Positions 23,377-64,000 of a stretch of DNA of 64,000 bases are shown here, piece by piece. Numbering within the stretch: the first letter of the stretch is position 1; the number at the start of each line of letters is the position of its first letter. The stretch lies in the IMG/VR virus record IMGVR_UViG_3300028735_000003, positions 186,001-250,000 of that record. The stretch is one strand, 5' to 3'. The notes beneath the pieces are model-generated. The model saw only the letters and a list, made by a program, of their open reading frames with translations, did not search any database and was not told where the DNA came from. The position numbers and the translations under genes are program-made.

Positions 23377-24276
23377 TCAGTACAATCTGCGGGCTCGAAG
23401 ATGTCTTAGGCGTTGAAATGCTGGATTTATAGCAGAATTCATGCTAAATACACCCAGCCCTGTTGGAGCTGGTCTTAAACTGTTCTTTATGTACTTCAAT
23501 TTTTCCCAATAATGTGTTAACAAAGAGTTATATTGAGTCATCATTAATTCGCTTACTGTGGGCAGATTAAAATTGATTCCATTATCTGTAATTTGGAATT
23601 CTCTTCCGCGTTCAATTAGTGCCTTAGAGGCTAAAGCGTAAAGAGTTGCTCCTTCGACAAGAATTTCTCCAAATTGCTCGACAAAATTATCATCATCAAA
23701 TTGGAAAAATGTAATATATGGAACTTGATTGAAATCCCACAAAGCTGTAGCAATCATTGTGGTTAATGTTTGTATTGAAAAATAAGAACAATCTACATAT
23801 ATTACATTTCCATATGAATCTGTAGCTTTAGCTTTACCATCTGAATTTAATCTTTCTCTCAATGATCTAAGTAATTTATTGATATTTTTAGTTGCGGCTT
23901 GAGAATAATTCAAACCAGGATCATCACCTAAATGAACATATCCATCTGTATTAATGGCAGGAATTTGTGTGTGTAGAACAACAAATCCAAATTCAACTTC
24001 TACTCTAAATCCGTTTACATATCCAGACCATACATCTCTCCATTCTCCATATGGCCCATTGATAGGTATTGTAAATATATAAGAATACTTGCCAACGCCT
24101 ACTTGTGCAACACCAGATGATGTCAGAGCCAAGGCAACTAGACCGTTTGGCTGAATTAAAGAAATTCTTGGAAAAGAGTCAGTGTTTATTGGCTCACCCG
24201 TACTGTCCTTAAATTGTACAGTTAAGTTAACTTGATCAGTTACGTCAATTAGTTCACCACGAGCTTTAATCGCCAT
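23377..24276 (-). CDS. Putative head-tail adaptor/neck protein with N-terminal Ig-like domain
   Basis: GVGKYSY...GEWRDVW Ig-like N-terminus; helical C-terminus with EFQITDNGINF; position in neck module. Confidence 0.5.
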   Translation of the reverse strand: MAIKARGELIDVTDQVNLTVQFKDSTGEPINTDSFPRISLIQPNGLVALALTSSGVAQVGVGKYSYIFTIPINGPYGEWRDVWSGYVNGFRVEVEFGFVVLHTQIPAINTDGYVHLGDDPGLNYSQAATKNINKLLRSLRERLNSDGKAKATDSYGNVIYVDCSYFSIQTLTTMIATALWDFNQVPYITFFQFDDDNFVEQFGEILVEGATLYALASKALIERGREFQITDNGINFNLPTVSELMMTQYNSLLTHYWEKLKYIKNSLRPAPTGLGVFSMNSAINPAFQRLRHLRARRLY

Positions 24277-31542: not shown

Positions 31543-33666
31543 TCACTTCTTAAATATATAAATATATTCATTCTTATCTATTCCAGCAGATTTATTTAAA
31601 TGACTCCTTATAGTTCTTAACGAAACCAAATCAATCGGCTCACCAAATTTATCTATTGCCATTTGTAACATCTTATGATAATTTTTTACATTAAGCCCAA
31701 ATAATTTATTTGGTTTTAACATATATTTAATATTATTAAGCGTATTCTCCCAATAAACATTATAAAAATAATCTTGCCCATTATTATATGCTTGAGTTAA
31801 ATCTGAAGAATAATATTCTTGATTAAAATAAGGCGGGCTACTAAAACTAAAATCCACTGTATTTTCATTTAATCTCACATTTTCAGAACCAGATTTAATA
31901 AGTTGTATATTCTTTAATCCTAAAGTATCTGACATTACTTGCAATTCATCAGTTGTTAATGGGTCTACACCAATATATTTCCTATTACAACTGGCTGCCC
32001 CTAGCATTCTTCCTCCCCATCCAGCAGAATAATCATATATAGTATCACCAACTTCACTATATTTCATACACAAATATTTTGCTATATATGGTTTAAAAAT
32101 AGATATGCTTGGCACCAAACGTGAAGAACGCATTCCTTGTATCAACATTCGGAAAGAAATATTAAAAGTTTCTTTATTTTCAGTGCCATACCAATCAAGA
32201 CCCAATCTATTACGTATTAATCGTTTTAATTTAAAATCATCATTAAATATTTCAATCATTGTTGGACAGTCTTTTTCTGTTGCATCATAAAACTTATGAC
32301 AGAAATACTTACAAACATCGGTTGCCAAAGAACCATTATTAAATAATTCATTACTTGATAAATCAGGAACAGTGTTACATAATTTTTCCCAACTTTTATT
32401 TACTTTATCAAAATTATCTGGATATAACCATCCTTGTCTTCGAAAATGTTCAAAAATTGGTTCTATTAAATTTTCCCTTTCATTTCTATTAAGAGTTTTT
32501 ACATATTGTGCAGTAATTAGTTGCCCATTAACCTCTACAATCTTATCATATAAATATTGATAACAATGTTTTAGATAAAAATGTTTTATTTTAGTTACAG
32601 TTCTTGGATGAATGTTATGATTATCAGATATTTGTTTAATAGTATTACCAATAGAAATTTCATTAATAATACTATTTTTTTCTGTCTCTGATACTTTATA
32701 CTCTTTTCTAATAAAAGTCCTTGAATTTTGATGATTAACTAATTCAAGATATTTTTCATATTTCCTTGTTAACCGAATATCTTCATTAGAATTTAAATAC
32801 AACCAATCCATTATTTTTAATATTTTTTCATTTCCGCTTTGTTCTAATTCATAGGTATTATTATTAGTTTTTGATATACTATGAAAATTAACTATAAACC
32901 CTAAATTTGATAATATTATTTTTTGAATAGCGCCACAACATTCATTTGTTGAAACCAAACTCCATTTCCATTCTTTAGAATTTTCCCTATACGAAAGACT
33001 ACCATCACCATCAAACATACCCCTAATAAAGTGTTGATCTAGATTGGTATTTAACCATGCAGGGTATTGTATAATAAAACTTTTAGCACGAGGGCAACCA
33101 TGTTCTATCATTTTTTGACAAACATGTTTGCTATACATTTTTACAGAACAAGATGGATATGTTTTGTCATTTATATTTGATAAATATCTGATAATCTTAG
33201 ATGTTGGCAAATCAATAAAATTACACAATTTTACCAAATGATTATAGTCTTCATCTTTTAACGATAAAGAAAATGTATTAATTTTGTCTGAATTATAAGC
33301 ATCAGCATAAAAAAATCCTAGCCAATAAGCTTTTTCTTTAGTATCAATAACATCAAATATATGTTCATTAAATCTTGTAAATCTCAATGCTTCTAATTTA
33401 TCTCTTAACAGCCCTCGTTCTTCGACCCATTTTTGTATTCTTCTTTTATCTATAGAAAACTTTATACCTAAAGACTTTGCTGATAATCCTTGTTCATATA
33501 AATAGCATATACGATCTATTTTATCTTCATTAAAATCTTCTTTAATAAGTTGCCATTTATTATTTTTTACAACTTCTCTAACATCTTTTTCTGGTAATTG
33601 CAATAATACTGCAATTCTTTTTATTGCAAATCCATCTTCTATCATTTCTTTAATTTTTTCATTCAT
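31543..33666 (-). CDS. HTH-LAGLIDADG endonuclease fused to amino-DNA methyltransferase
   Basis: KAYWLGFFYADA and HFIRGMFDGDG LAGLIDADG motifs; C-terminal IYDYSAGWGGRMLGA (SAM-binding) and FSSPPYFNQEYY (catalytic SPPY). Confidence 0.8.
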   Translation of the reverse strand: MNEKIKEMIEDGFAIKRIAVLLQLPEKDVREVVKNNKWQLIKEDFNEDKIDRICYLYEQGLSAKSLGIKFSIDKRRIQKWVEERGLLRDKLEALRFTRFNEHIFDVIDTKEKAYWLGFFYADAYNSDKINTFSLSLKDEDYNHLVKLCNFIDLPTSKIIRYLSNINDKTYPSCSVKMYSKHVCQKMIEHGCPRAKSFIIQYPAWLNTNLDQHFIRGMFDGDGSLSYRENSKEWKWSLVSTNECCGAIQKIILSNLGFIVNFHSISKTNNNTYELEQSGNEKILKIMDWLYLNSNEDIRLTRKYEKYLELVNHQNSRTFIRKEYKVSETEKNSIINEISIGNTIKQISDNHNIHPRTVTKIKHFYLKHCYQYLYDKIVEVNGQLITAQYVKTLNRNERENLIEPIFEHFRRQGWLYPDNFDKVNKSWEKLCNTVPDLSSNELFNNGSLATDVCKYFCHKFYDATEKDCPTMIEIFNDDFKLKRLIRNRLGLDWYGTENKETFNISFRMLIQGMRSSRLVPSISIFKPYIAKYLCMKYSEVGDTIYDYSAGWGGRMLGAASCNRKYIGVDPLTTDELQVMSDTLGLKNIQLIKSGSENVRLNENTVDFSFSSPPYFNQEYYSSDLTQAYNNGQDYFYNVYWENTLNNIKYMLKPNKLFGLNVKNYHKMLQMAIDKFGEPIDLVSLRTIRSHLNKSAGIDKNEYIYIFKK

Positions 33667-33727
33667 TTGTGCAGCCTCGCAAAACAATATAACATCATAT
33701 TAATAGATTGTCCTGGTTCACATGCAC

Positions 33728-33760
33728 AAAAAGAAAAGCCACTGTTACAGTGGCTTTTCT
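33728..33760 (-). terminator. Rho-independent terminator after major capsid gene
   Basis: Perfect stem AGAAAAGCCACTG-tta-CAGTGGCTTTTCT (33732-33760) followed by a T-run on the minus strand. Confidence 0.85.
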
Positions 33761-33794: not shown

Positions 33795-34528
33795 TTAGGC
33801 TCCGACAACAACTGATTTACGTCCTGCAGCGACACCACGTGGGTTGACGATTGCAATTCCGATTATTTCAGATACTACCCAGCCAAGCTTAAGTTGTTTT
33901 GGCTCATCGGCTGGTAGAACTTCAATGTCTTGGCGAATTGGCATAACACCAACGAACTCAGGGTCTGCGGTACCATAGATGGTTCCTGGAGGAACGATCT
34001 TGGAAACCATAATATCAGTTCCCCAAATGTGGGCGTATAGACCAGTTTGTAGAACTTCTCTCATTGTTACAGGATCGAAGTCTCCACCACCTGTACCTTG
34101 ACCACCACCGGATCCCCACTTAAGGATATCAGTGAACTCATTAATGTTCATGAAATACTTGGTTGTTACCAAGTCCCAGCGGTCGATCTGTTGCTTAATC
34201 TCAACAAGGTCTCTCTTCAAAAGACCTGCGTCAGCTATGTCAGTCAATGTATTTTCAACAGAAGCTGCTGCATCTAATGCTGCGAATACGTTTGCATCTT
34301 CTTGTGCCATTATTTCCTGGCGAGCCTTTTGGACTGCACGGTCAATGACATTGAATCTGCGACGTTTTACTTCAGCGATGCGGACGGTTGGGTTTGCGTA
34401 AATCTCAAACTCAGGAACTACAACACGATCACCGAACACACGGGATTCTGGTCCTGTACCATTGCTTGAAATAACAACGGCTGCTACATCGATATCTCTA
34501 TCGTATGTTGGCATAGCACCTTGGGGTA
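33795..34528 (-). CDS. Major capsid protein, exon 2
   Basis: HK97-fold-like: PEFEI..NP, RFNVIDRA...EIMAQED, ends IAIVNPRGVA. Joins exon 1 to give VVDPLPQGAMPTYDRD; 337 aa in total. Confidence 0.9.
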
Positions 34529-35589
34529 CAAGGTTTGTGTTAAGATCAATTTACATTGATCTGATAAGTCATTTCTGCTTATCTCTCCATATCTCTATGA
34601 AGTTCAGACTGTATCACCATTATCTTGCGATAACGATTGGCATTCTAGTCGTTGAGGATCGGCATACAATTTGTATTTCATACATTCAACAAAATATTCT
34701 TCCACTAATTTACTTGTTTTTAATGTATTTTCTTTGTTTAATGATAAGTAACAATATTCTTTGTTGTTTCTAACAAATTTACAAACCTTACTTCTAATAT
34801 CAAATGAAGCTTTTAACATATTTTGCAGTTTTATATTTTCCATTTCTGAAAAACCTTCTGTATGTAGCCTCAAATTAATATTATTTTTTGTTATATTGTT
34901 GCTTCCATCATCCATTATCCAAAAAGCCAAAGATCTTAATGAGAGATAATTTACTAATTCATCTCTGATTATTTTCTTATTATTTTCATAAAATAAGTCA
35001 TAAAAGAATTTAAATTCATTATGAGTTACCGTATTAAAGGTATACATTATTGAATTTTTTCTTTTATCTTTTCTAATATTGATATTATTTACAAAATTAC
35101 CTAAAACTGCTTTTTTGTAAAAAACTAAGTCTTTTTGTTTTTCACAATGCGAGATAATTAATCTATATGTTTTTTTATTTCTGCCATGTGGTGCGATACA
35201 TCCATCACCAAGAAGCGTCCCAATAACCATTTCACGTTGTTCTTTAGCTAACGGGATTCGTTTGATTATTTCAAATTTTCTTTGCTTTGGATTTTTATCG
35301 ATATTATAAAGCTTTAAATATCTAACTACAGTACTTTTATTTACTTGTAAGATATCTGCTATTTCATAAGCTGTTTTTCTTTTTTTAACATATAGCTCTT
35401 GTAAAATATCTCTATCTAAATCTTTGCTTTTCATTCTGCCTTTCCTGCTGATTGTCTATGTCATCTTTAAATTTTCACTTTATTTGTTTGTAAACCAGCT
35501 ACGGTGCTTGGTTTGTATGATCATAAAGTATTAAAGCGTTTAGAGTTCCCAGCATACAGCCAATTTTTACATCCGCTACCCTTAATTTA
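34529..35589 (-). ncRNA. Group I intron (1061 nt) in major capsid gene
   Basis: Exon 1 ends in U (GAUCCGU); intron IGS GGGUAGCGGAU pairs with exon 1 (P1, U.G) and exon 2 UACCC (P10). Core elements UGCUGGGAA, AAUCAGCAGG, UCAACGACUA, GAUACAGUC; terminal G at 34529; splicing restores the frame. Confidence 0.93.
34604..35434 (-). CDS. Intron-encoded LAGLIDADG homing endonuclease with N-terminal HTH
   Basis: IGTLLGDG and LAFWIMDDGS motifs intact; 3' end overlaps the intron core. Confidence 0.9.
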   Translation of the reverse strand: MKSKDLDRDILQELYVKKRKTAYEIADILQVNKSTVVRYLKLYNIDKNPKQRKFEIIKRIPLAKEQREMVIGTLLGDGCIAPHGRNKKTYRLIISHCEKQKDLVFYKKAVLGNFVNNINIRKDKRKNSIMYTFNTVTHNEFKFFYDLFYENNKKIIRDELVNYLSLRSLAFWIMDDGSNNITKNNINLRLHTEGFSEMENIKLQNMLKASFDIRSKVCKFVRNNKEYCYLSLNKENTLKTSKLVEEYFVECMKYKLYADPQRLECQSLSQDNGDTV

Positions 35590-35869
35590 ACGGATCAACT
35601 ACCAATGCTCTACGTGCGATACCGTGGTAGTCTAAGTTTCTACGAATTGGGTTTGCCATAGCCTGAGCTAATGCAATCTTTCCGTCTTGTGTCATAATAG
35701 CACGAGAAATAAGCTCGTCACGTTTTTCGTCGCTAAGAGCCACTTGTCCTGCCATTCCAATATTAGATGGTTGATTCTCTTCAAGAATAGCTGCATACTT
35801 TACTAAAGTCTGCAACGCATCCTTTAAAGATGAGGCGTTCATTGCGCCTTGATTGTTAAACATATTCAT
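35590..35869 (-). CDS. Major capsid protein, exon 1
   Basis: AGGAG RBS; LAQAMANPIRRNLDY.GIARRALVVDP, continued by exon 2. Confidence 0.9.
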
Positions 35870-36002
35870 GGTTTCTCCTATAGGAATTATTTGCCAGTTT
35901 TACCAGCTTTATTGTTATGATTTGAATGGATGAGGGATTCCGTTTTAGGGATTTAGATTTTCATCTGTCCATTCCCTCGACAGACTTAAATTATTTAATA
36001 AA

Positions 36003-36668
36003 TTAGTACTGTGGATTGAAGTGGAATACTGCGAAAGCGTAGTTTCTTGTTCCAAGTGCTGAAGCCAAGTAGTTTGGAGTATTTACCAAAGATCCATTGG
36101 TTTCGAAGCTTACGAAGTGACCAACTACCACTGTGTTACCTGCTGCTGCGGTACTTCCAACTGGAGTCAAACGACCACCAACTGTTGAGCTGGCTGGAAC
36201 GAATGTTAGTGCAGTACCTGTGTTAAGAGAGGCATTTGAAGAAACTAGACCGTCTGCTGCTTGGTCACATGCGCCGTCTAGAGATACTGCATAAAGTCCT
36301 GGCTTGTCCCATAAAGTTACCTTGCCAGAGCTTGTTGCCGTGTGTGGTCCTAGTTTTGTACCACCAGTTGATACTTGACCAACAGTTCCACCGACTACTG
36401 ATCCGAACAAAGTTCCGTATCCTATAATACCTTCGTCTGCTAACATCAACGGACGATCAGTGGTTGCAACGTTACGAGTAACAACAACTCTCTTCAATGA
36501 ATTAACATATCCATCAAATACGTCAAAAGCTGCCTTGTCTGTTGCTGCTGTCGCCAAAATTGACTTGAAAGTAACGACCTCGCCACCCATAAGGGTTAAT
36601 ACTTCCGTATCAAGTCCATCGAATTGACCTAATGGTTGAACACCTGGTTGTAAAAGTTTTAGAGCCAT
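36003..36668 (-). CDS. Putative capsid decoration/cement protein
   Basis: Immediately upstream of capsid; T.SSGKVTLW..PG motif; similar to 44094-44783. Confidence 0.6.
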   Translation of the reverse strand: MALKLLQPGVQPLGQFDGLDTEVLTLMGGEVVTFKSILATAATDKAAFDVFDGYVNSLKRVVVTRNVATTDRPLMLADEGIIGYGTLFGSVVGGTVGQVSTGGTKLGPHTATSSGKVTLWDKPGLYAVSLDGACDQAADGLVSSNASLNTGTALTFVPASSTVGGRLTPVGSTAAAGNTVVVGHFVSFETNGSLVNTPNYLASALGTRNYAFAVFHFNPQY

Positions 36669-57320: not shown

Positions 57321-60300
57321 TTATAGTGTTGGTGGCGCTCCACCACTGCCCTCACCACCTCCACCTGGCATAGGCGGAGGTGGAGGTGTATTAGGTAAAC
57401 CTTCTAATCCTGGCAAGCCACCGCCTGAAGAAGTTTCACCTGGAAGTGGTGTTCCTTCAGAGGCTGAAGTTGCTCCTTCTTGTTGATTTTTTGCTTCTGG
57501 AATTTCATCTTCTTCATCTAACGCTCTTAAAGCATTAAGTGGCATTTCCTTCAAAGCCGCCTTTTCCTTTTCAAAAATCTCAGCATCTACAATTTCTCTA
57601 CGCATCTTCCTTAATTCATTTTCATATTCAAGACCCATAGATCTGAATAATGTATGTAATGATACCCTCTTTTGAGCGCCATCTCCTTGAGTCAATGTTA
57701 CTAAATTATTAATGTAATCACCAGCATCAAACAATGACATGTGGTTCCAGTCAACATCTGGGACAATTAATTGCTTCTCCCCATTAGAATAATCATAGAA
57801 TCCCTGAATCTTAGATATTGGGGCAAAAATCTTTCTCTTAAGCCATATACTCATCATATTTCTAAATTGCATATAGCGTTGTCTTAATACATCTAATGCT
57901 ACGCCACCGTTAGCATATGTAGTGTCAGCGCCCCCATCCATTAATACTGATGGTACCTGTAAACCTACATATATTTCTTTAATTATTTGCGTAATATCAT
58001 TAGAGATGTCGTAAATTCCTTGATTATACCCAACTTTCTCAACAGTAACACCTTCATGCGTAAAAATCTTGAAATCTTTGTCATATTGCGCGCTATTTCC
58101 TTGAATTGTAATTTTTCCGTTTCTTCTGGTAATAAACAAGCCAGTAGGGACCTCAAAACACCACACTTTGCCATTATATTTTTCTATTTTAACAATATTT
58201 TGCTTTATTTTAGTTTTACTATTTCTTGGTGTTTTATAAACTAAAGGATAATTCCATTTATTAGAATTTGACCACAACACAGTATATAATGGCAATCTTC
58301 TTCCATTAAGATGTTTTTTATTATTTCTGATGGACATACTTGGAACATATCCACATTTATACGCTATTTCATAAATGTCATCAGCTAACTGCTTTGAAGT
58401 AGAACAATAAGCGAATCTATCACTATCTTTTTTGTTATTTTTGTATACAGAACCGCTTCCATCAATTAATGCATTCAAAAGAATATTCAATAGTCTTGGA
58501 GAAAAATCTAATACATTTCTTGGGATTTGTTTAAATTGTGCTTTCGTTTCCACGTTCATATCCCCAATAATATTTTCAAAATAATCATACAGTTCTTTAC
58601 TATAAAATACTGCGGACCATATATATTGTTGATTATTTGTATATTCACTTCTTTTTTCTATTCTTTGAATATATGGAATATTTATACATTTAGAGAAACT
58701 ATCTAAACATTGTCTCATTTTATTATAATTTTTATTAGTTGTTTGAGATATTCCAACGGTATATTGATGTTTATCGTTAATATAAAGACGTCCTTCATTT
58801 AATAAATACCCTAAAAGTTCTAAATATAACTCTACTGGAATTTGTTTCCCGCAAACATCAATAAAAATTACATTATCATTTCCTTGCCAATTTATTTTAG
58901 AACGGAATTTATTGTAATTATTAAGATTTAAGTCTTTTGCTTCAATTTTCTTCCAATCACTCCAAATAGATTTCTTTAAACTACGATTATCATTATAGTC
59001 ATCTATCTTTTCAGAGGTCCACATTTTATGATTAGGAGTAACTTTAATGTCTAATTTTTCATTCTTAAAATGAAACATATTTCCATTATAATTATATACA
59101 CTTGCTCCGGTTGCATAATGATATTCTAATTGTTCATTATTTGAATTAAAGCAGGCAATTTTAACATTTTCTTTAGGAGATATTTTATCTAATTTTTCTG
59201 TATAGTTTATAACCTCATAGAATTTTTTAAATCCGCTATCAGTTAATACTTCAGTTTCTTCATCATAACACTCAAAAACATTTCTCCATGCTTCTAAATC
59301 AGCAAATGTGGGTTTAAAATCAGCAGATCCTATTTTAACTAATGTTAATGGATTAATCATATTATCTGCCTGAGCATACTTAGATTCACGCAATTTATCA
59401 AATAGCATTAATTGTCTAAATATACATACTGGTAAACCTGTTCCCCTAATTTCATAAGGACTGATTCTACGAGCTAAGTGAGATACATGAAAATTATCCA
59501 AAGGAATATTTTCTCCATGCTTTACAGAGTCAATAATATGCTGATTCAATTGTTTGCGCTGCTCAATATCTGACGGTTTATTTGAAAATACGATTTTCTT
59601 CAGATTTTCATCTGGTCTAAGCATAATAATAGGTTCATTAGCAACAACAGTACGTTTAACTAACATATAGTCTGGATTCTGAATAACTAATCTGCTCCAT
59701 TTACCTTTGCTTTCATCAAGCTCAGCATATACGAAAGCTTCTCCCAAAAGCCAAAATTCTTGAGCAATTTGAACACATATGTTCATAAGATCTATTTCTT
59801 CAATCATATCATTAAAGAATTTTTCAATATCCTTATTTGGGCACTTTATATTTAATTTACTAATTGGATATGTACTGTGTAAATTAATCGCGTTATGTAC
59901 GAATGGATTTAATGCATAAAAACTACGGCACCAAGCATTAATAGTAGGTCTATCACGAGGCAAGTTTAAATTGCTATTTAACCATAATGGAGAATATACT
60001 TCTGGCGTTTGTTTTACGACATCACCATTTCCTCCACGATAATTACTACTTCCTGCGCTACTACCGCCACTAACAACCTGCGCGTTTTTAGTAATACCAA
60101 CTAAAGAAGTGACAACAGCATTTGATGTCATTCCATCTTCATTAAATGTCGGTCCAGTACCATCTTTAAATAAACCTTGTTTTACTTCTTCTGTTAGAGC
60201 CTCTCTACGAAATGCTGATACGCTTTTAGCCATCAATGCACTAACTTGTGGAACACCCTGTGACATATGCGCACTGGTATGAGCAATATTCGACTCAATT

Positions 60301-60377
60301 AATCCACTGCCAACTGGTGGAATAGCCCCCCTTTTCTCTAAAAACTGCTCAGACTTAGATTTTCTATAATTAGACAT
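57321..60377 (-). CDS. Portal protein containing one intein (626 aa after splicing)
   Basis: Follows terminase; FY..NP.V.NAI...YP, GEAF, SHLARR.SPYE.RG motifs; Pro/Gly-rich tail. Confidence 0.85.
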   Translation of the reverse strand: MSNYRKSKSEQFLEKRGAIPPVGSGLIESNIAHTSAHMSQGVPQVSALMAKSVSAFRREALTEEVKQGLFKDGTGPTFNEDGMTSNAVVTSLVGITKNAQVVSGGSSAGSSNYRGGNGDVVKQTPEVYSPLWLNSNLNLPRDRPTINAWCRSFYALNPFVHNAINLHSTYPISKLNIKCPNKDIEKFFNDMIEEIDLMNICVQIAQEFWLLGEAFVYAELDESKGKWSRLVIQNPDYMLVKRTVVANEPIIMLRPDENLKKIVFSNKPSDIEQRKQLNQHIIDSVKHGENIPLDNFHVSHLARRISPYEIRGTGLPVCIFRQLMLFDKLRESKYAQADNMINPLTLVKIGSADFKPTFADLEAWRNVFECYDEETEVLTDSGFKKFYEVINYTEKLDKISPKENVKIACFNSNNEQLEYHYATGASVYNYNGNMFHFKNEKLDIKVTPNHKMWTSEKIDDYNDNRSLKKSIWSDWKKIEAKDLNLNNYNKFRSKINWQGNDNVIFIDVCGKQIPVELYLELLGYLLNEGRLYINDKHQYTVGISQTTNKNYNKMRQCLDSFSKCINIPYIQRIEKRSEYTNNQQYIWSAVFYSKELYDYFENIIGDMNVETKAQFKQIPRNVLDFSPRLLNILLNALIDGSGSVYKNNKKDSDRFAYCSTSKQLADDIYEIAYKCGYVPSMSIRNNKKHLNGRRLPLYTVLWSNSNKWNYPLVYKTPRNSKTKIKQNIVKIEKYNGKVWCFEVPTGLFITRRNGKITIQGNSAQYDKDFKIFTHEGVTVEKVGYNQGIYDISNDITQIIKEIYVGLQVPSVLMDGGADTTYANGGVALDVLRQRYMQFRNMMSIWLKRKIFAPISKIQGFYDYSNGEKQLIVPDVDWNHMSLFDAGDYINNLVTLTQGDGAQKRVSLHTLFRSMGLEYENELRKMRREIVDAEIFEKEKAALKEMPLNALRALDEEDEIPEAKNQQEGATSASEGTPLPGETSSGGGLPGLEGLPNTPPPPPMPGGGGEGSGGAPPTL
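58095..59270 (-). other. Intein in portal (392 aa) with LAGLIDADG-like domain
   Basis: VFE|CYDEETEVLT...VTPNHKM...VWCFEVP...IQGN|SAQY. Confidence 0.9.
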
Positions 60378-60452: not shown

Positions 60453-63400
60453 CTAAAATCTTCTTGGAATAAATCCAGTTACTACTAATGGTTTATTTCC
60501 ATTAGATAGATTCTGCTGCTGAGAAGAAGGATTATTATTGCTAAATCCTTGAGACACTAAAAACTTATATGCCAAATAACCATTTAATAATGCCATAAAC
60601 CCGTCATTAGGTGTGCTTCCCTTAACATAATGTATAACTGGATCCGCTCCAGTCTTAGATATTGATGGTTTTATTTCCATACTAGAACAATGGTCTATTA
60701 ACCAGGCTATTTTTTCATAATCTCCGAAAGGAAATCTAATTTCTCCTTTTTTCATCTTTTCATATAGTTCTCGTATATAGAAATCCCTTTCAAAATCTAT
60801 TTCTTTAGGGAACGAATCTTTTCTAAATAAAACGTAATTATTTACTTTACTTCTAGCACGAGATACCATATAGCGATCTCCATATATGGTATGCAATGTT
60901 TCTGACAAATCTTGTGAAAACCCAATATCTCCAATTGCTAACTGAATACTATATTGTCTCATAATCTGGTCAATAATTCCTTTTTTACTTTCCAAATCAT
61001 TACGTTTGAATTTTGTTGCAAATTCAATAGATAATAATCCAGGTCCTTTGGCTGCCAAAACAACTGCAGTACTATATGATTGCCCAGACACTTTTGAATT
61101 CTCAGGATTAGCTAATTGTTCCACGTCTGCGCGTAACCCATAGTCTAGACCAAGAACTACTAATTGTTCTTCACCAGGATTAATTCTCGCTTTGAATTTC
61201 CTTCCGGCATCTCCACAATTATTAGCAATTTCTTCTGGAGTAATTGGGCTAGTATCACCTTGGAAAAACTCACCAAGAACTTCGGTACGAAAAATCCTTT
61301 CTGTATTAATTGGATGTTTACCTGGTTTTTCATTCTCTATATCTTGTCTTGTAAACATAGGCATGTATAGCTGATTGATATGAAAACCAATCATCTTACA
61401 ATCTTCATCATTATGATCTCTCAAAGCTATCCATTTACCACGTTCAGCAGCATCTCTTTTATCTTGTTCGAATCCACAATGCGGACATTTTACTATAAAA
61501 TCATAAATCCAAATTTTTTCCCAATCGTCAGATTCTGGGGTATATAGTGGAAAGTGTTTCTTGCACTTTTCACAACCAAGATAATAATATTGTTGGGATG
61601 AAGACATCCACATCTTATGAAAATCAGAACCCTTTTTACGAGGTGTTCCAAAATATACCTGTACTCCCTTGCTGGGCTTACCATATTTAGCAGTCGTCAA
61701 GATCTTAAGAGCATTGCCCATTGCTAAACTAGAAGTACGTTGACAATTATGTACAATTGGTCCAGAAATATATTTAGTAAACTTATTATTAGATGATAAA
61801 ATAAAATTATGATTATCTTTAACCTCTAAATCGTAAACATATTCTCTTTTTTCTACGGCACTAACACTATCAACAACAAAATAACAATATGATTTATATT
61901 TATTATTCCATTTATAATTAAAATTATAAAATTCTGGAGCTATTTTTTTTCTCATACTATCATTAAAATATGGAGATATCAATTCGTATAATAACTTTAA
62001 TCCTTTTCTATTAAAAAATAAACAATAATGTCCATTATATTTTTTATAATTACAAGAAATACCTAAATCATTAAATTTCTTTACAAATCTTATATGGCTA
62101 TCTTCGTCGAACGAATAAGTGGAAATTCTACCAGAATAACCTGAAACACCAATATTATTTAAACTACAACTGTCCATAAACCATATTGCAATCCCCCTAG
62201 CATCAATTTCATCTAATATCCACTGTGGGCAAGAAGTTTTTGTTTTAGGAAATTCTTGTTCTAAACCTATAATTTCTGTACAAAAATTAACAGCGGACTT
62301 TTTTGCATAACCTTTATTTCTAACAATATTAGTTTTACAGTTAAATATATTAGCTTTCCATTGGCAATATTCTTTTTGATTAATGCTATGCGTAACCGAT
62401 AATCTAATTTTAGATTTTCCTTCGGTCCTTATATGTCCATTACCTAAAAATGATCCTAATATTAGTTGCTTTTGATCAGAATTAATTGCTTTTACACTTA
62501 AACCTTTATCTATAGAACCTTTTATTAAAGATCCTTTAGATAGTTTAGACGCTTCAACCCACCCATTTGATGTTAAAAATTTATGATTTTCTGTACATTT
62601 TATCTTTCTTCCATTACAACTTATTTGTACTAATTTTTGCTTGCCTTTCTTAAAAATATTAGAAATTTCTTTATATTCAAATGTTTCTGATAACTCATTA
62701 AAACTTAATACTAATGGCATATCATGATTTTTACAAAAATCATGATATAGTCTGCCAATTGATTTAGGTCCATTGTTTGTTACAACTCTTTGTTGATATG
62801 GAAAGCACTCATCAAAAAAGATAACGTCAGCAGTATTATGTGTTGGAATACATTTTCTAGTTACCAAAAATAAATTACTTGGACTATCAACTGTAATACA
62901 GCGCATTGGAACTGGATCAATAGGCTTTACATCAACTATAAATCTATGTGAACTATTTGTTGTATTTTTATTCTTTATATTTATTAATTTTCTTTTTAAT
63001 CTAAAAACTTGTAAATTAGTTGAGAATCTAATTCTATATTGGTCCTGATATCTTTTGTCATATCTGTAATTTTGCCCTTTATAAATATAAGCTTTAATTC
63101 CTAAACCTAATACAAGCTCATATACTTGATAAGCCAATCTCTTATTTATTTGTACGAATTCTATATTACCATTTTTATCACAATGACCGCTGCTATCTAA
63201 AAGCCCTTGCAATAAGGATAATCTCTGTACAAATGAACTTCTCATATAAATATCAGGTATATATTTGTCGTAAGTTACATTAAATTTCTTATAACTACTG
63301 ACTAATAAACCTAATTTGCGTAATTTTGCAGTAAGCCCTAAAATACGATAAGAATTTGATTTTGAAATACCAAAACTTCTATAATTGTTTATTGAAGATG

Positions 63401-64000
63401 GAATAATTCTATGTTTATAATTACTTAATACTTCAGGATCGACGGTATCTATTCGCCCTGAACCATCACCACTTCCTAACCACAATCCTAGCAAATACGG
63501 ATCTACAATTAATTCTTTTTCTGAAAATTGTAATGGTTTACAATTAGGTATAGAATGGTTTGTTTCACCAAAATAATTTAATGTTTGAAATATCTCTTTA
63601 GTATTTTTTATTTGAGGGTTAGGCGCATTTTGCCGTTTACCACATAAAAATTTATTAAGATTAATTCGATCTTTTTGGGTATATGTTTGCCATAAATGGT
63701 CTGCACAGGCATCTATTTCTGTTCCATCATCAAATATAATTCTATATGATTCTGGTTTCAAATCTATAGGATGTAATTTAATCACATGACATATATTACC
63801 ACTTTCATCAAATAATTCATCTCCCTCTTTAAGATTAATTAATTTAACAAAACCATTTGGAGTTGGAATCTCAGTATCTAATGATAACATACGACCCATT
63901 AATCTATCAGCATCAATGCCTGTAGACTCAATCCAAATATGATTACCACCAACGAATTGTTTAAAATGCAAAGAATCATTAGTAGGACTAGTGGGATCTA
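60453..64000 (-). CDS. terL: Large terminase subunit (GpA-like), 5' end outside window, with two inteins
   Basis: Spliced RLMGR-TADVIFFDE-CQ (Walker B), FGTP, CEKC/CPHC zinc site, GKWIA, GFHINQL, nuclease GLDYG and PNDGF; frame open to the window edge. Confidence 0.9.
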   Translation of the reverse strand, partial: DPTSPTNDSLHFKQFVGGNHIWIESTGIDADRLMGRMLSLDTEIPTPNGFVKLINLKEGDELFDESGNICHVIKLHPIDLKPESYRIIFDDGTEIDACADHLWQTYTQKDRINLNKFLCGKRQNAPNPQIKNTKEIFQTLNYFGETNHSIPNCKPLQFSEKELIVDPYLLGLWLGSGDGSGRIDTVDPEVLSNYKHRIIPSSINNYRSFGISKSNSYRILGLTAKLRKLGLLVSSYKKFNVTYDKYIPDIYMRSSFVQRLSLLQGLLDSSGHCDKNGNIEFVQINKRLAYQVYELVLGLGIKAYIYKGQNYRYDKRYQDQYRIRFSTNLQVFRLKRKLINIKNKNTTNSSHRFIVDVKPIDPVPMRCITVDSPSNLFLVTRKCIPTHNTADVIFFDECFPYQQRVVTNNGPKSIGRLYHDFCKNHDMPLVLSFNELSETFEYKEISNIFKKGKQKLVQISCNGRKIKCTENHKFLTSNGWVEASKLSKGSLIKGSIDKGLSVKAINSDQKQLILGSFLGNGHIRTEGKSKIRLSVTHSINQKEYCQWKANIFNCKTNIVRNKGYAKKSAVNFCTEIIGLEQEFPKTKTSCPQWILDEIDARGIAIWFMDSCSLNNIGVSGYSGRISTYSFDEDSHIRFVKKFNDLGISCNYKKYNGHYCLFFNRKGLKLLYELISPYFNDSMRKKIAPEFYNFNYKWNNKYKSYCYFVVDSVSAVEKREYVYDLEVKDNHNFILSSNNKFTKYISGPIVHNCQRTSSLAMGNALKILTTAKYGKPSKGVQVYFGTPRKKGSDFHKMWMSSSQQYYYLGCEKCKKHFPLYTPESDDWEKIWIYDFIVKCPHCGFEQDKRDAAERGKWIALRDHNDEDCKMIGFHINQLYMPMFTRQDIENEKPGKHPINTERIFRTEVLGEFFQGDTSPITPEEIANNCGDAGRKFKARINPGEEQLVVLGLDYGLRADVEQLANPENSKVSGQSYSTAVVLAAKGPGLLSIEFATKFKRNDLESKKGIIDQIMRQYSIQLAIGDIGFSQDLSETLHTIYGDRYMVSRARSKVNNYVLFRKDSFPKEIDFERDFYIRELYEKMKKGEIRFPFGDYEKIAWLIDHCSSMEIKPSISKTGADPVIHYVKGSTPNDGFMALLNGYLAYKFLVSQGFSNNNPSSQQQNLSNGNKPLVVTGFIPRRF
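61746..62807 (-). other. Terminase intein 2 (354 aa, class 1)
   Basis: FFDE|CFPY...CTENHKFL...VYDLEV...IVHN|CQR. Confidence 0.92.
62835..63890 (-). other. Terminase intein 1 (352 aa, class 3-type)
   Basis: GR|MLSLDTEIPTP...ADHLW...MRCITV...PTHN|T; W/C/T class 3 signature. Confidence 0.88.

What the first reader, a model, noticed from the sequence alone, without database searches (positions are those of the whole stretch)
33795..35869. Major capsid gene split by a group I intron with an intact LAGLIDADG homing endonuclease
Splice sites can be read exactly (exon 1 ends 35590, exon 2 starts 34528), with P1/P10 pairings and frame restoration (DPLPQGAM). Phage group I introns are best known in nucleotide-metabolism genes and usually carry HNH or GIY-YIG enzymes. 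Here production of the most abundant virion protein depends on splicing, and unspliced RNA stops 2 codons into the intron.
Basis: partly seen in the sequence, partly recalled or inferred. Interest (0 to 1): 0.6.

Follow-up and report, generated by a model that had tools for sequence, protein, structure and literature searches.

The report
Capsid gene split by mobile intron
The major capsid gene of this uncultivated jumbo phage is interrupted by a 1,061-base group I (self-splicing type) intron that carries its own intact LAGLIDADG homing endonuclease gene. The feature is real and well supported, but it is a new example of a kind of element already known in phages.

Summary
Confirmed. On the minus strand the major capsid protein (MCP) gene is split into exon 1 (35869..35590) and exon 2 (34528..33795) by a 1,061-nt insert (35589..34529).

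- **Collinearity:** Bacillus phage G gp27 and 77 of the 80 closest environmental MCP genes run straight through this point. The two exon matches are separated by exactly the one Leu codon that the splice rebuilds.
- **Group I anatomy:** exon 1 ends in U paired to G (P1). P10, the P3/P7 pseudoknot, P4-P5abc, P6, P8, P9, P9.1, P9.2 and a terminal G are all present.
- **Rfam:** only a sub-threshold match (26.8 bits against a cut-off of 50).
- **Covariation:** strong in a family of more than 60 related introns from viral contigs, including compensatory changes in P1 and P10 at this same site.
- **Endonuclease:** a 276-aa I-SceI-like LAGLIDADG enzyme with both catalytic Asp residues is looped out of P6. 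Its stop codon lies inside the 3' strand of P7.

No RNA data exist, so splicing itself is inferred.

Capsid-gene introns are already published (mycobacteriophage LittleE, lactococcal Tuc2009), so this is a new member of a known kind. The added value is that the MCP gene of this widespread phage-G-like clade is an intron hotspot: at least 6 insertion sites and up to 3 introns per gene.

The parts
35590..35869 (-). MCP exon 1 (93 codons plus the first base of the Leu codon). Shine-Dalgarno AGGAG at 35879..35875.
34529..35589 (-). Group I intron, 1,061 nt, GC 0.277 against 0.42-0.46 in the exons. The last base, 34529, is the terminal G.
33795..34528 (-). MCP exon 2 (last two bases of the Leu codon, 243 codons and the stop).
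35590..35595 (-). P1 5' strand (end of exon 1, AUCCGU). The U at 35590 forms the U.G wobble at the 5' splice site.
35571..35581 (-). Internal guide sequence. 35581..35577 pairs with the first 5 nt of exon 2 (P10). 35576..35571 pairs with the end of exon 1 (P1).
   Evidence: covariation at the same site in L071, L072, L085, L156
35559..35564 (-). P3 5' strand. It pairs with 34641..34636 across the ORF.
35447..35553 (-). P4-P5-P5a-P5b-P5c-P4' domain.
   Evidence: z = -4.35
35437..35445 (-). P6 5' strand. It contains the endonuclease's Shine-Dalgarno-like AGGAAAGG and pairs with 34664..34656.
34604..35434 (-). Homing endonuclease ORF, 276 aa: N-terminal HTH plus LAGLIDADG_2. Motifs are GDG at residues 76-78 and DDG at 175-177. 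The ORF is looped out of P6 and its last ~60 nt also encode P6', P7, P3', P8 and J8/7.
34647..34655 (-). P7 5' strand with two bulged bases. Its 3' partner is 34610..34604, which contains the ORF's UGA stop.
34636..34641 (-). P3 3' strand.
34618..34635 (-). P8 hairpin.
34585..34602 (-). P9 hairpin with a GAGA loop.
34563..34583 (-). P9.1 hairpin. Its loop sequence is conserved across the family.
34544..34561 (-). P9.2 hairpin (7 bp, GUAA loop), read from the sequence.
   Evidence: sequence only; covariation not tested
33732..33760 (-). Intrinsic-terminator-like hairpin (13-bp stem plus T run) 35 nt after the MCP stop codon.

Best explanation
The MCP gene of a roughly 354-kb phage-G-like jumbo phage carries a mobile group I intron. 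The pre-mRNA folds into the ribozyme. P1 pairs the last six exon-1 bases with the guide sequence, with a U.G wobble at the cut. P10 aligns exon 2. P3-P9 form the catalytic core, with the guanosine site in P7. Two transesterifications then remove bases 35589..34529 and rebuild a Leu codon, giving a continuous capsid protein of about 337 aa. The intron's P6 loop holds a monomeric I-SceI-type LAGLIDADG endonuclease. That enzyme is expected to cut intron-less capsid alleles of co-infecting relatives at the DPL/PQG site, so that repair copies the intron in (homing). The endonuclease's ribosome-binding site lies in the 5' strand of P6 and its stop codon lies in the 3' strand of P7, so folding of the ribozyme and translation of the endonuclease should exclude one another. 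Shown here: gene anatomy, collinearity, RNA pairings with covariation, protein family and patchy distribution. Inferred: splicing, cleavage, homing and the translation/folding trade-off.
For: Collinearity comes (77 of 80 relatives uninterrupted, separated by exactly one codon). The Rfam RF00028 match covers J6/7-P7-P3'-P8-J8/7-P7'-P9 at E 4e-5. RNAalifold on 13 ORF-less relatives independently predicts P3, P4, P5, P6, P8 and P9, and 20 of 29 pairs show compensatory changes. Across 57 3' halves, including the window's, 87.4% of cells are paired against 30-38% when partners are slid, with a covariation score of 0.531 against 0.08-0.14. P3 pairs 6/6 and P4 pairs 5/5 in all 15 MCP introns, using 8 different P3 sequences, and P6 duplexes flank every ORF. 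In 14 introns exon 1 ends in U and the intron ends in G. At this site the P1 pair next to the wobble is G-C, A-U or C-G, following the Pro codon's third base, and P10 changes in step with exon 2. The P4-P5abc domain folds with z = -4.35. The endonuclease scores PF03161 at 126 bits and matches I-SceI at 1e-11, and both catalytic Asp residues are present. A second sample carries the same junction.
Against: The Rfam score (26.8 bits) is below the gathering threshold of 50, and nothing was reported when the whole window or a 1.3-kb stretch was searched. No RNA run contains the sequence, so no spliced junction has been seen. No biochemical data exist. The contig in sample X2 has a 1-nt deletion in a homopolymer inside the endonuclease ORF, so the endonuclease may not be intact in every carrier.
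Confidence: 0.92

Rival explanations
1. A free-standing homing endonuclease gene has split the capsid gene into two separately translated polypeptides that assemble without RNA splicing, as happens with some split phage genes.
For: Exon 2 has an in-frame ATG at 34514. Splicing is unproven.
Against: The 230 nt outside the ORF form a complete group I core with covariation. P1 and P10 track exon changes. ORF-less copies of the same element sit in the same gene in L072, L099 and L156. The sequence before the ATG at 34514 is the same coding sequence found in intron-less alleles, so no new ribosome-binding site has appeared.
Confidence: 0.03
2. The intron is a decayed, non-splicing relic, and this capsid allele is a pseudogene in a defective or dying lineage.
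For: There is no RNA evidence. The Rfam score is below threshold.
Against: Every core helix is intact in the window copy, with P3 at 6/6, P4 at 5/5 and P7 fully paired. The exons are 98% identical in protein to intron-less alleles and carry no stops. The same allele is present in a second sample.
Confidence: 0.03
3. The insert is an assembly chimera or a different element (intein or group II intron).
For: The window is a metagenome assembly.
Against: An independent contig spans the junction. Three other contigs carry homologous inserts at the identical site. In-frame stops two codons into the insert exclude an intein. No Rfam family other than RF00028 gave a meaningful match.
Confidence: 0.01

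Closest known systems
Capsid-gene intron of mycobacteriophage LittleE (Cluster J; PMC3706429)
   Same: It is an intron of about 0.8 kb in the major capsid subunit gene, absent from close relatives, with U at the end of exon 1 and G at the end of the intron. It carries a LAGLIDADG ORF. Splicing was shown there by RT-PCR and N-terminal sequencing.
   Different: In LittleE the LAGLIDADG ORF lies on the opposite strand and the intron type was only called 'most likely group I'. Here the ORF is on the sense strand inside P6 and overlaps the core, and the group I fold is supported by covariation. The host phages are unrelated (a siphovirus of Mycobacterium against a phage-G-like jumbo phage).
Capsid-gene intron of lactococcal phage Tuc2009 (as cited in PMC3706429)
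   Same: A group I intron in a phage capsid subunit gene.
   Different: I did not read the primary paper. No sequence comparison was made.
T4 td intron with I-TevI (from my own knowledge of the T4 introns; general review PMC2988022)
   Same: It works the same way: a group I intron with the endonuclease ORF looped out of a peripheral helix, and endonuclease translation limited by RNA structure around its ribosome-binding site.
   Different: The td intron sits in a nucleotide-metabolism gene, carries a GIY-YIG enzyme and has the P7.1/P7.2 insertions of subgroup IA2. The window's intron has none between P3' and P8 and has a P5abc-type extension instead.
Staphylococcus phage Twort orf142 with three group I introns (Landthaler and Shub 1999, cited in PMC6669764)
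   Same: Several group I introns of one family in a single phage gene, as seen here in the relatives L195 and L156.
   Different: The host gene and phage lineage differ. The window itself has only one intron.
I-SceI and other monomeric LAGLIDADG_2 endonucleases (PDB 1r7m, 6x1j)
   Same: Two LAGLIDADG motifs in one chain, both catalytic Asp residues conserved, and matches at E 1e-11 and 4e-16 over about 215 residues.
   Different: The window's enzyme has an extra N-terminal helix-turn-helix of about 45 aa, is encoded by a phage, and has an untested target.
Intron-rich jumbo phages (Jug phages, PMC12880540) and the PhiPA3 gp210 intron endonuclease (PMC11620839)
   Same: [quoted passage not shown] In PhiPA3 an intron endonuclease mediates competition between co-infecting phages.
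   Different: Those cases involve terL, nrdD, polymerase or RNAP genes, mostly with HNH enzymes. The capsid gene is not reported as a target in the passages I read.

Membership tests
Group I intron (Rfam RF00028 Intron_gpI) | Score at or above Rfam's gathering threshold (50 bits) | tested here: not met
   26.8 bits and E 4e-5 over 34721..34585, with nothing at gathering threshold. The 831-nt ORF in P6 separates the two halves of the core, so only the 3' half is scored properly.
Group I intron (Rfam RF00028 Intron_gpI) | 5' splice site after a U that pairs with G in P1, with the guide sequence inside the intron | tested here: met
   6-bp P1 with a U.G wobble. Three different Watson-Crick pairs occur at the adjacent position among introns at the same site.
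Group I intron (Rfam RF00028 Intron_gpI) | The last intron nucleotide is G, and P10 pairs the guide sequence with exon 2 | tested here: met
   G at 34529 and a 5-bp P10. P10 changes in step with exon 2 in L156 and L072.
Group I intron (Rfam RF00028 Intron_gpI) | Conserved core P3-P4-P5-P6-P7-P8-P9 with a P3/P7 pseudoknot | tested here: met
   Covariation is seen in every helix that varies. P7 is 100% paired in 57 sequences.
Group I intron (Rfam RF00028 Intron_gpI) | Guanosine-dependent self-splicing | not testable with these tools
   No RNA run holds the sequence. This needs an in vitro assay.
LAGLIDADG homing endonuclease (Pfam PF03161, I-SceI type) | Pfam score above the curated cut-off over the full domain | tested here: met
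   126.1 bits against a cut-off of 25, covering profile positions 1-164 of 168.
LAGLIDADG homing endonuclease (Pfam PF03161, I-SceI type) | Two LAGLIDADG motifs, each ending in a catalytic acidic residue | tested here: met
   GDG at residues 76-78 and DDG at 175-177 align to the motifs of 6x1j and I-SceI.
LAGLIDADG homing endonuclease (Pfam PF03161, I-SceI type) | Site-specific cleavage of the intron-less allele | not testable with these tools
   Needs a cleavage assay.
Phage major capsid protein (PHROG 2522, phage G gp27 type) | Full-length collinear match of both exons to the family profile and to an annotated capsid protein | tested here: met
   Exon 1 matches the profile at 12-87 and exon 2 at 88-317. 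Identity to phage G gp27 'major head protein' is 52-60%.
Mobile (homing) intron | Patchy presence at an identical site among near-identical host genes | tested here: met
   3 of 80 close relatives carry a homologous intron at the same site and 77 lack it. The GC content of the insert is far below that of the exons.

The most novel reading that the evidence does not exclude
One family of LAGLIDADG-bearing group I introns has radiated within a single gene, the major capsid gene of a globally widespread uncultivated phage-G-like clade. It occupies at least six sites, with up to three introns per gene separated by internal exons of only 14-34 nt, and copies in one genome exchange segments. Its endonucleases may serve as weapons that cut the capsid gene of co-infecting intron-less relatives, as shown for the PhiPA3 intron endonuclease.
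Probability: 0.3. Interest if true: 0.6.

Novelty: new member of a known kind. Interest (0 to 1): 0.4.

Why it matters
The most abundant virion protein of this phage can be made only if a ribozyme removes about 1 kb from its mRNA, so late-gene output is tied to splicing efficiency. That principle is already documented (LittleE, Tuc2009). What this case adds is a well-resolved, covariation-supported intron family in an uncultivated but very widespread jumbo-phage clade, with the capsid gene as its preferred target. That gives a natural data set for three questions: how group I introns and their LAGLIDADG enzymes move to new sites, how ORF and ribozyme sequences overlap, and whether intron endonucleases shape competition among related phages. 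There is also a practical consequence. Gene callers will report this capsid gene as two fragments plus an endonuclease, which will mislead MCP-based phage surveys.

Tried and rejected
- **Rfam:** at gathering threshold on the whole window, and by E-value on 34400..35700, it gave nothing. The match appeared only in a genome-wide single-family search and in a 301-nt search.
- **Megablast of the locus against deposited phage genomes:** no match.
- **Deposited phages generally:** they hold no close relative of the endonuclease (best 24-30% identity). For the intron core they hold only about 50-nt matches.
- **Sequencing runs:** no RNA run exists. The probable source run X1 laid nothing because of the tool's filter. 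X2-X4 are contigs and cannot show splicing.
- **Upstream ORF 36003..36668:** it sits where phage G has its decoration gene but shows no BLASTP similarity to gp26, so I do not name it.
- **Intein:** rejected because of in-frame stops.
- **Group II intron:** rejected because nothing matched and the anatomy is group I.
- **Subgroup:** not assigned. The features noted are no P2, no P7.1/P7.2 and a P5abc-type extension.
- I replaced it with a script that reads the same places by coordinates.
- **Spliced mRNA or protein:**, I never built or searched the joined form. Each exon was searched separately by reference, and collinearity was shown by aligning intact homologues to the window.
- **CM of the family:** not built. 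The ORF would split any hit, and the pair counts already answered the question.

Full report
**Setting.** The window is bases 186001-250000 of a single 353,765-bp viral contig, which CheckV estimates to be 79% complete. All large ORFs in the window lie on the minus strand. The nearest named relative of the capsid gene is Bacillus phage G. The contig's sequence occurs in microbial-mat and hot-spring metagenomes.

**The observation.**
- On the minus strand, an ORF from 35869 runs to a stop at 35584-35582.
- An 831-nt ORF occupies 35434..34604.
- A third open frame runs to 33795.
- PHROG 2522 (major head protein) matches the first piece at profile positions 12-87 and the third piece at 88-317.
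- tblastn places the first piece on phage G up to base 23447 and the third piece from base 23448, inside the annotated major head protein gp27.
- Aligning gp27 back to the window shows that it reads straight through DPL/PQG.
- A search of viral contigs with exon 2 found 395 relatives. Among the best 80 (93-99% protein identity), 77 have the two exon matches separated by only the one Leu codon. Three (L071, L072, L085) carry a 1.07-1.8 kb insert with a LAGLIDADG gene.

The split is therefore real, exactly placed and polymorphic. Protein collinearity alone allows three equivalent cut positions. Only 35590/34528 gives a U before the cut and a G as the last intron base.

**The insert is a group I intron.** Rfam reports nothing at its curated threshold. 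A single-family search of the genome and a 301-nt search both find RF00028 at 34721..34585, with 26.8 bits and E about 4e-5. The alignment covers J6/7, P7, P3', P8, J8/7, P7' and P9. The low score is expected, because the ORF separates the 5' and 3' halves of the core.

I then gathered relatives:
- A core-motif scan of viral contigs gave more than 115 stretches.
- Iterated nhmmer with the two intron halves found 67 5' halves and 94 3' halves.
- Thirteen ORF-less members were aligned by reference (A1). RNAalifold predicted P3, P4, P5, P6, P8 and P9 without guidance, and 20 of 29 pairs showed changes on both sides.
- Fifty-seven 3' halves, including the window's, were aligned (A2) and scored against my P7/P8/P9/P9.1 structure:

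| Measure | My structure | Partners slid by 1-3 columns | Shuffles |
|---|---|---|---|
| Cells paired | 87.4% | 30-38% | 0 of 500 reach it |
| Covariation score | 0.531 | 0.08-0.14 | 0 of 500 reach it |

P7 is paired in all 57 sequences, and one of its pairs switches from A-U to G-C.

For the pairs that span the ORF, P3 is 6/6 and P4 is 5/5 in all 15 capsid-gene introns, using eight different P3 sequences. The sequences flanking each ORF form a P6 duplex well below shuffled controls in 14 of 15 cases. The P4-P5abc domain of the window's copy folds as predicted, with z = -4.35.

**Splice-site helices.** In 14 introns whose junctions follow from protein collinearity, exon 1 always ends in U and the intron always ends in G. 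P1 is 4-9 bp long with the U.G wobble. At the window's site, the Pro codon's third base is G, A or C in different phages, and the guide sequence carries C, U or G opposite it. P10 follows exon 2 in the same way, including in L156, where the first exon-2 codon differs.

**The endonuclease.**
- The 276-aa ORF scores 126 bits on LAGLIDADG_2 and has a weak N-terminal helix-turn-helix.
- It matches solved I-SceI-type enzymes at E 4e-16 and E 1e-11.
- Both motifs keep their acidic residues, GDG at 76-78 and DDG at 175-177.
- Its start codon follows the 5' strand of P6, which contains an AGGAAAGG ribosome-binding sequence.
- Its stop codon is the UGA inside the 3' strand of P7, so about 60 nt serve as both coding sequence and ribozyme core.
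- Four family members end at that same UGA (the window, L085, L072 and L138). Most of the others stop earlier within the core.

I infer, without a test, that folding of the ribozyme hides the ribosome-binding site and that translating ribosomes would disrupt the core.

**Mobility.** The intron's GC content is 0.277, against 0.42-0.46 in the exons and 0.34 for the window. Carriers are a small minority among near-identical capsid genes. Against the nearest intron-less allele (L051), four synonymous differences sit within 5 nt of the junction, flanked by 27 and 38 identical bases. That pattern fits co-conversion or selection for P1/P10, but I did not test it statistically. A contig from another study (X2) carries the same exon 1/intron junction, and X3 holds an intron-less relative.

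**Wider picture.** Other capsid genes of this clade hold introns of the same family at other sites. Sites are given by the flanking residues:

| Site | Contigs |
|---|---|
| QAM/ANP | L195 |
| NPI/RKN | L099, L138, L156 |
| DYH/GIA | L072 |
| RAL/IVD | L156 |
| DPL/PQG | the window, L071, L072, L085, L156, L195 |
| KAR/QEI | L195 |
| DPV/TMR | L152, probably L187 |

L195 and L156 each have three introns. L156 has a 14-nt internal exon and L072 has one of 34 nt. In L195, the introns at two different sites share a P4-P6 domain that is 98% identical, while other pairs are 60-90% identical. That points to exchange between copies within one genome.

**Comparison with the literature.**
- Introns in capsid genes are documented. 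LittleE has splicing proven and a LAGLIDADG ORF on the opposite strand. Tuc2009 is cited in the same paper (PMC3706429).
- Intron-rich jumbo phages are documented, with 18.5 introns per genome in terL, nrdD and polymerase genes (PMC12880540).
- An intron endonuclease that acts in phage-phage competition is known in PhiPA3 (PMC11620839).

The window's element is therefore a new member of a known kind. The capsid-gene hotspot is an extension worth noting, not a new principle.

**Limits.**
- Splicing, cleavage and homing are all inferred.
- The intron's subgroup was not assigned.
- The joined (spliced) sequence was deliberately never built or searched.

Noticed in passing
L195:2610-6311 (-), L156:3200-5953 (-), L072:2190-3998 (+): Related capsid genes carry two or three introns of the same family. 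L195 has three, each with a LAGLIDADG ORF. L156 has three, with a 14-nt internal exon. L072 has two, with a 34-nt internal exon.
   Followed up: partly
L195:4828-4995 and L195:3473-3626 (-): Introns at two different sites of one capsid gene share a P4-P6 domain that is 98% identical. Their guide sequences, P3 helices and endonucleases differ. This suggests recombination or recent site-hopping within one genome.
   Followed up: partly
window 31543..33687 (-): A free-standing 714-aa ORF lies just downstream of the capsid terminator. It combines an N-terminal endonuclease (PHROG 4645 at E 4e-47, LAGLIDADG_3) with a C-terminal part resembling DNA methyltransferase families.
   Followed up: partly
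window 60453..63971 (-) and 57321..60377 (-): A 1,172-aa frame combines terminase large-subunit ATPase matches with Intein_splicing, LAGLIDADG_2 and a separate LAGLIDADG_3 match. It is probably terL with one or two inteins. The neighbouring 1,018-aa ORF has a weak LAGLIDADG_3 match.
   Followed up: partly
G000:C1:136997-137473 (-), outside the window: A third LAGLIDADG_2 match lies inside a 799-aa open frame. It may be another intein or a fusion.
   Followed up: no
window 35379: The contig from the independent sample X2 lacks one base in an A-run of the endonuclease ORF. This is either a frameshifted endonuclease in that population or an assembly error.
   Followed up: no
window 34569..34577 and alignment A2 columns 101-120: The P9.1 loop sequence (CAGAAAUGA) is nearly invariant in most family members, although its stem covaries freely. 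It may be a tertiary-contact element. This is unexplained.
   Followed up: no
L072:2646-3920 (+): The endonuclease in this intron is 424 aa long. By eye its long N-terminus consists of several repeats of the helix-turn-helix module that occurs once in the window's enzyme.
   Followed up: no
Many of them are jumbo-sized and some hold two to four copies within a few kb.
   Followed up: partly
L001:1-1087 (Bacillus phage G, NC_023719 19865-21534): Phage G's endolysin gene is annotated as joined from two pieces, with another CDS overlapping the start of the same range. Phage G itself may therefore carry an intervening element, though not in its capsid gene.
   Followed up: no
LR745208.1 394688-397134 (-): In a 485-kb uncultured huge phage, a distant homologue of this endonuclease lies about 1.2 kb downstream of the capsid homologue.
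   Followed up: no
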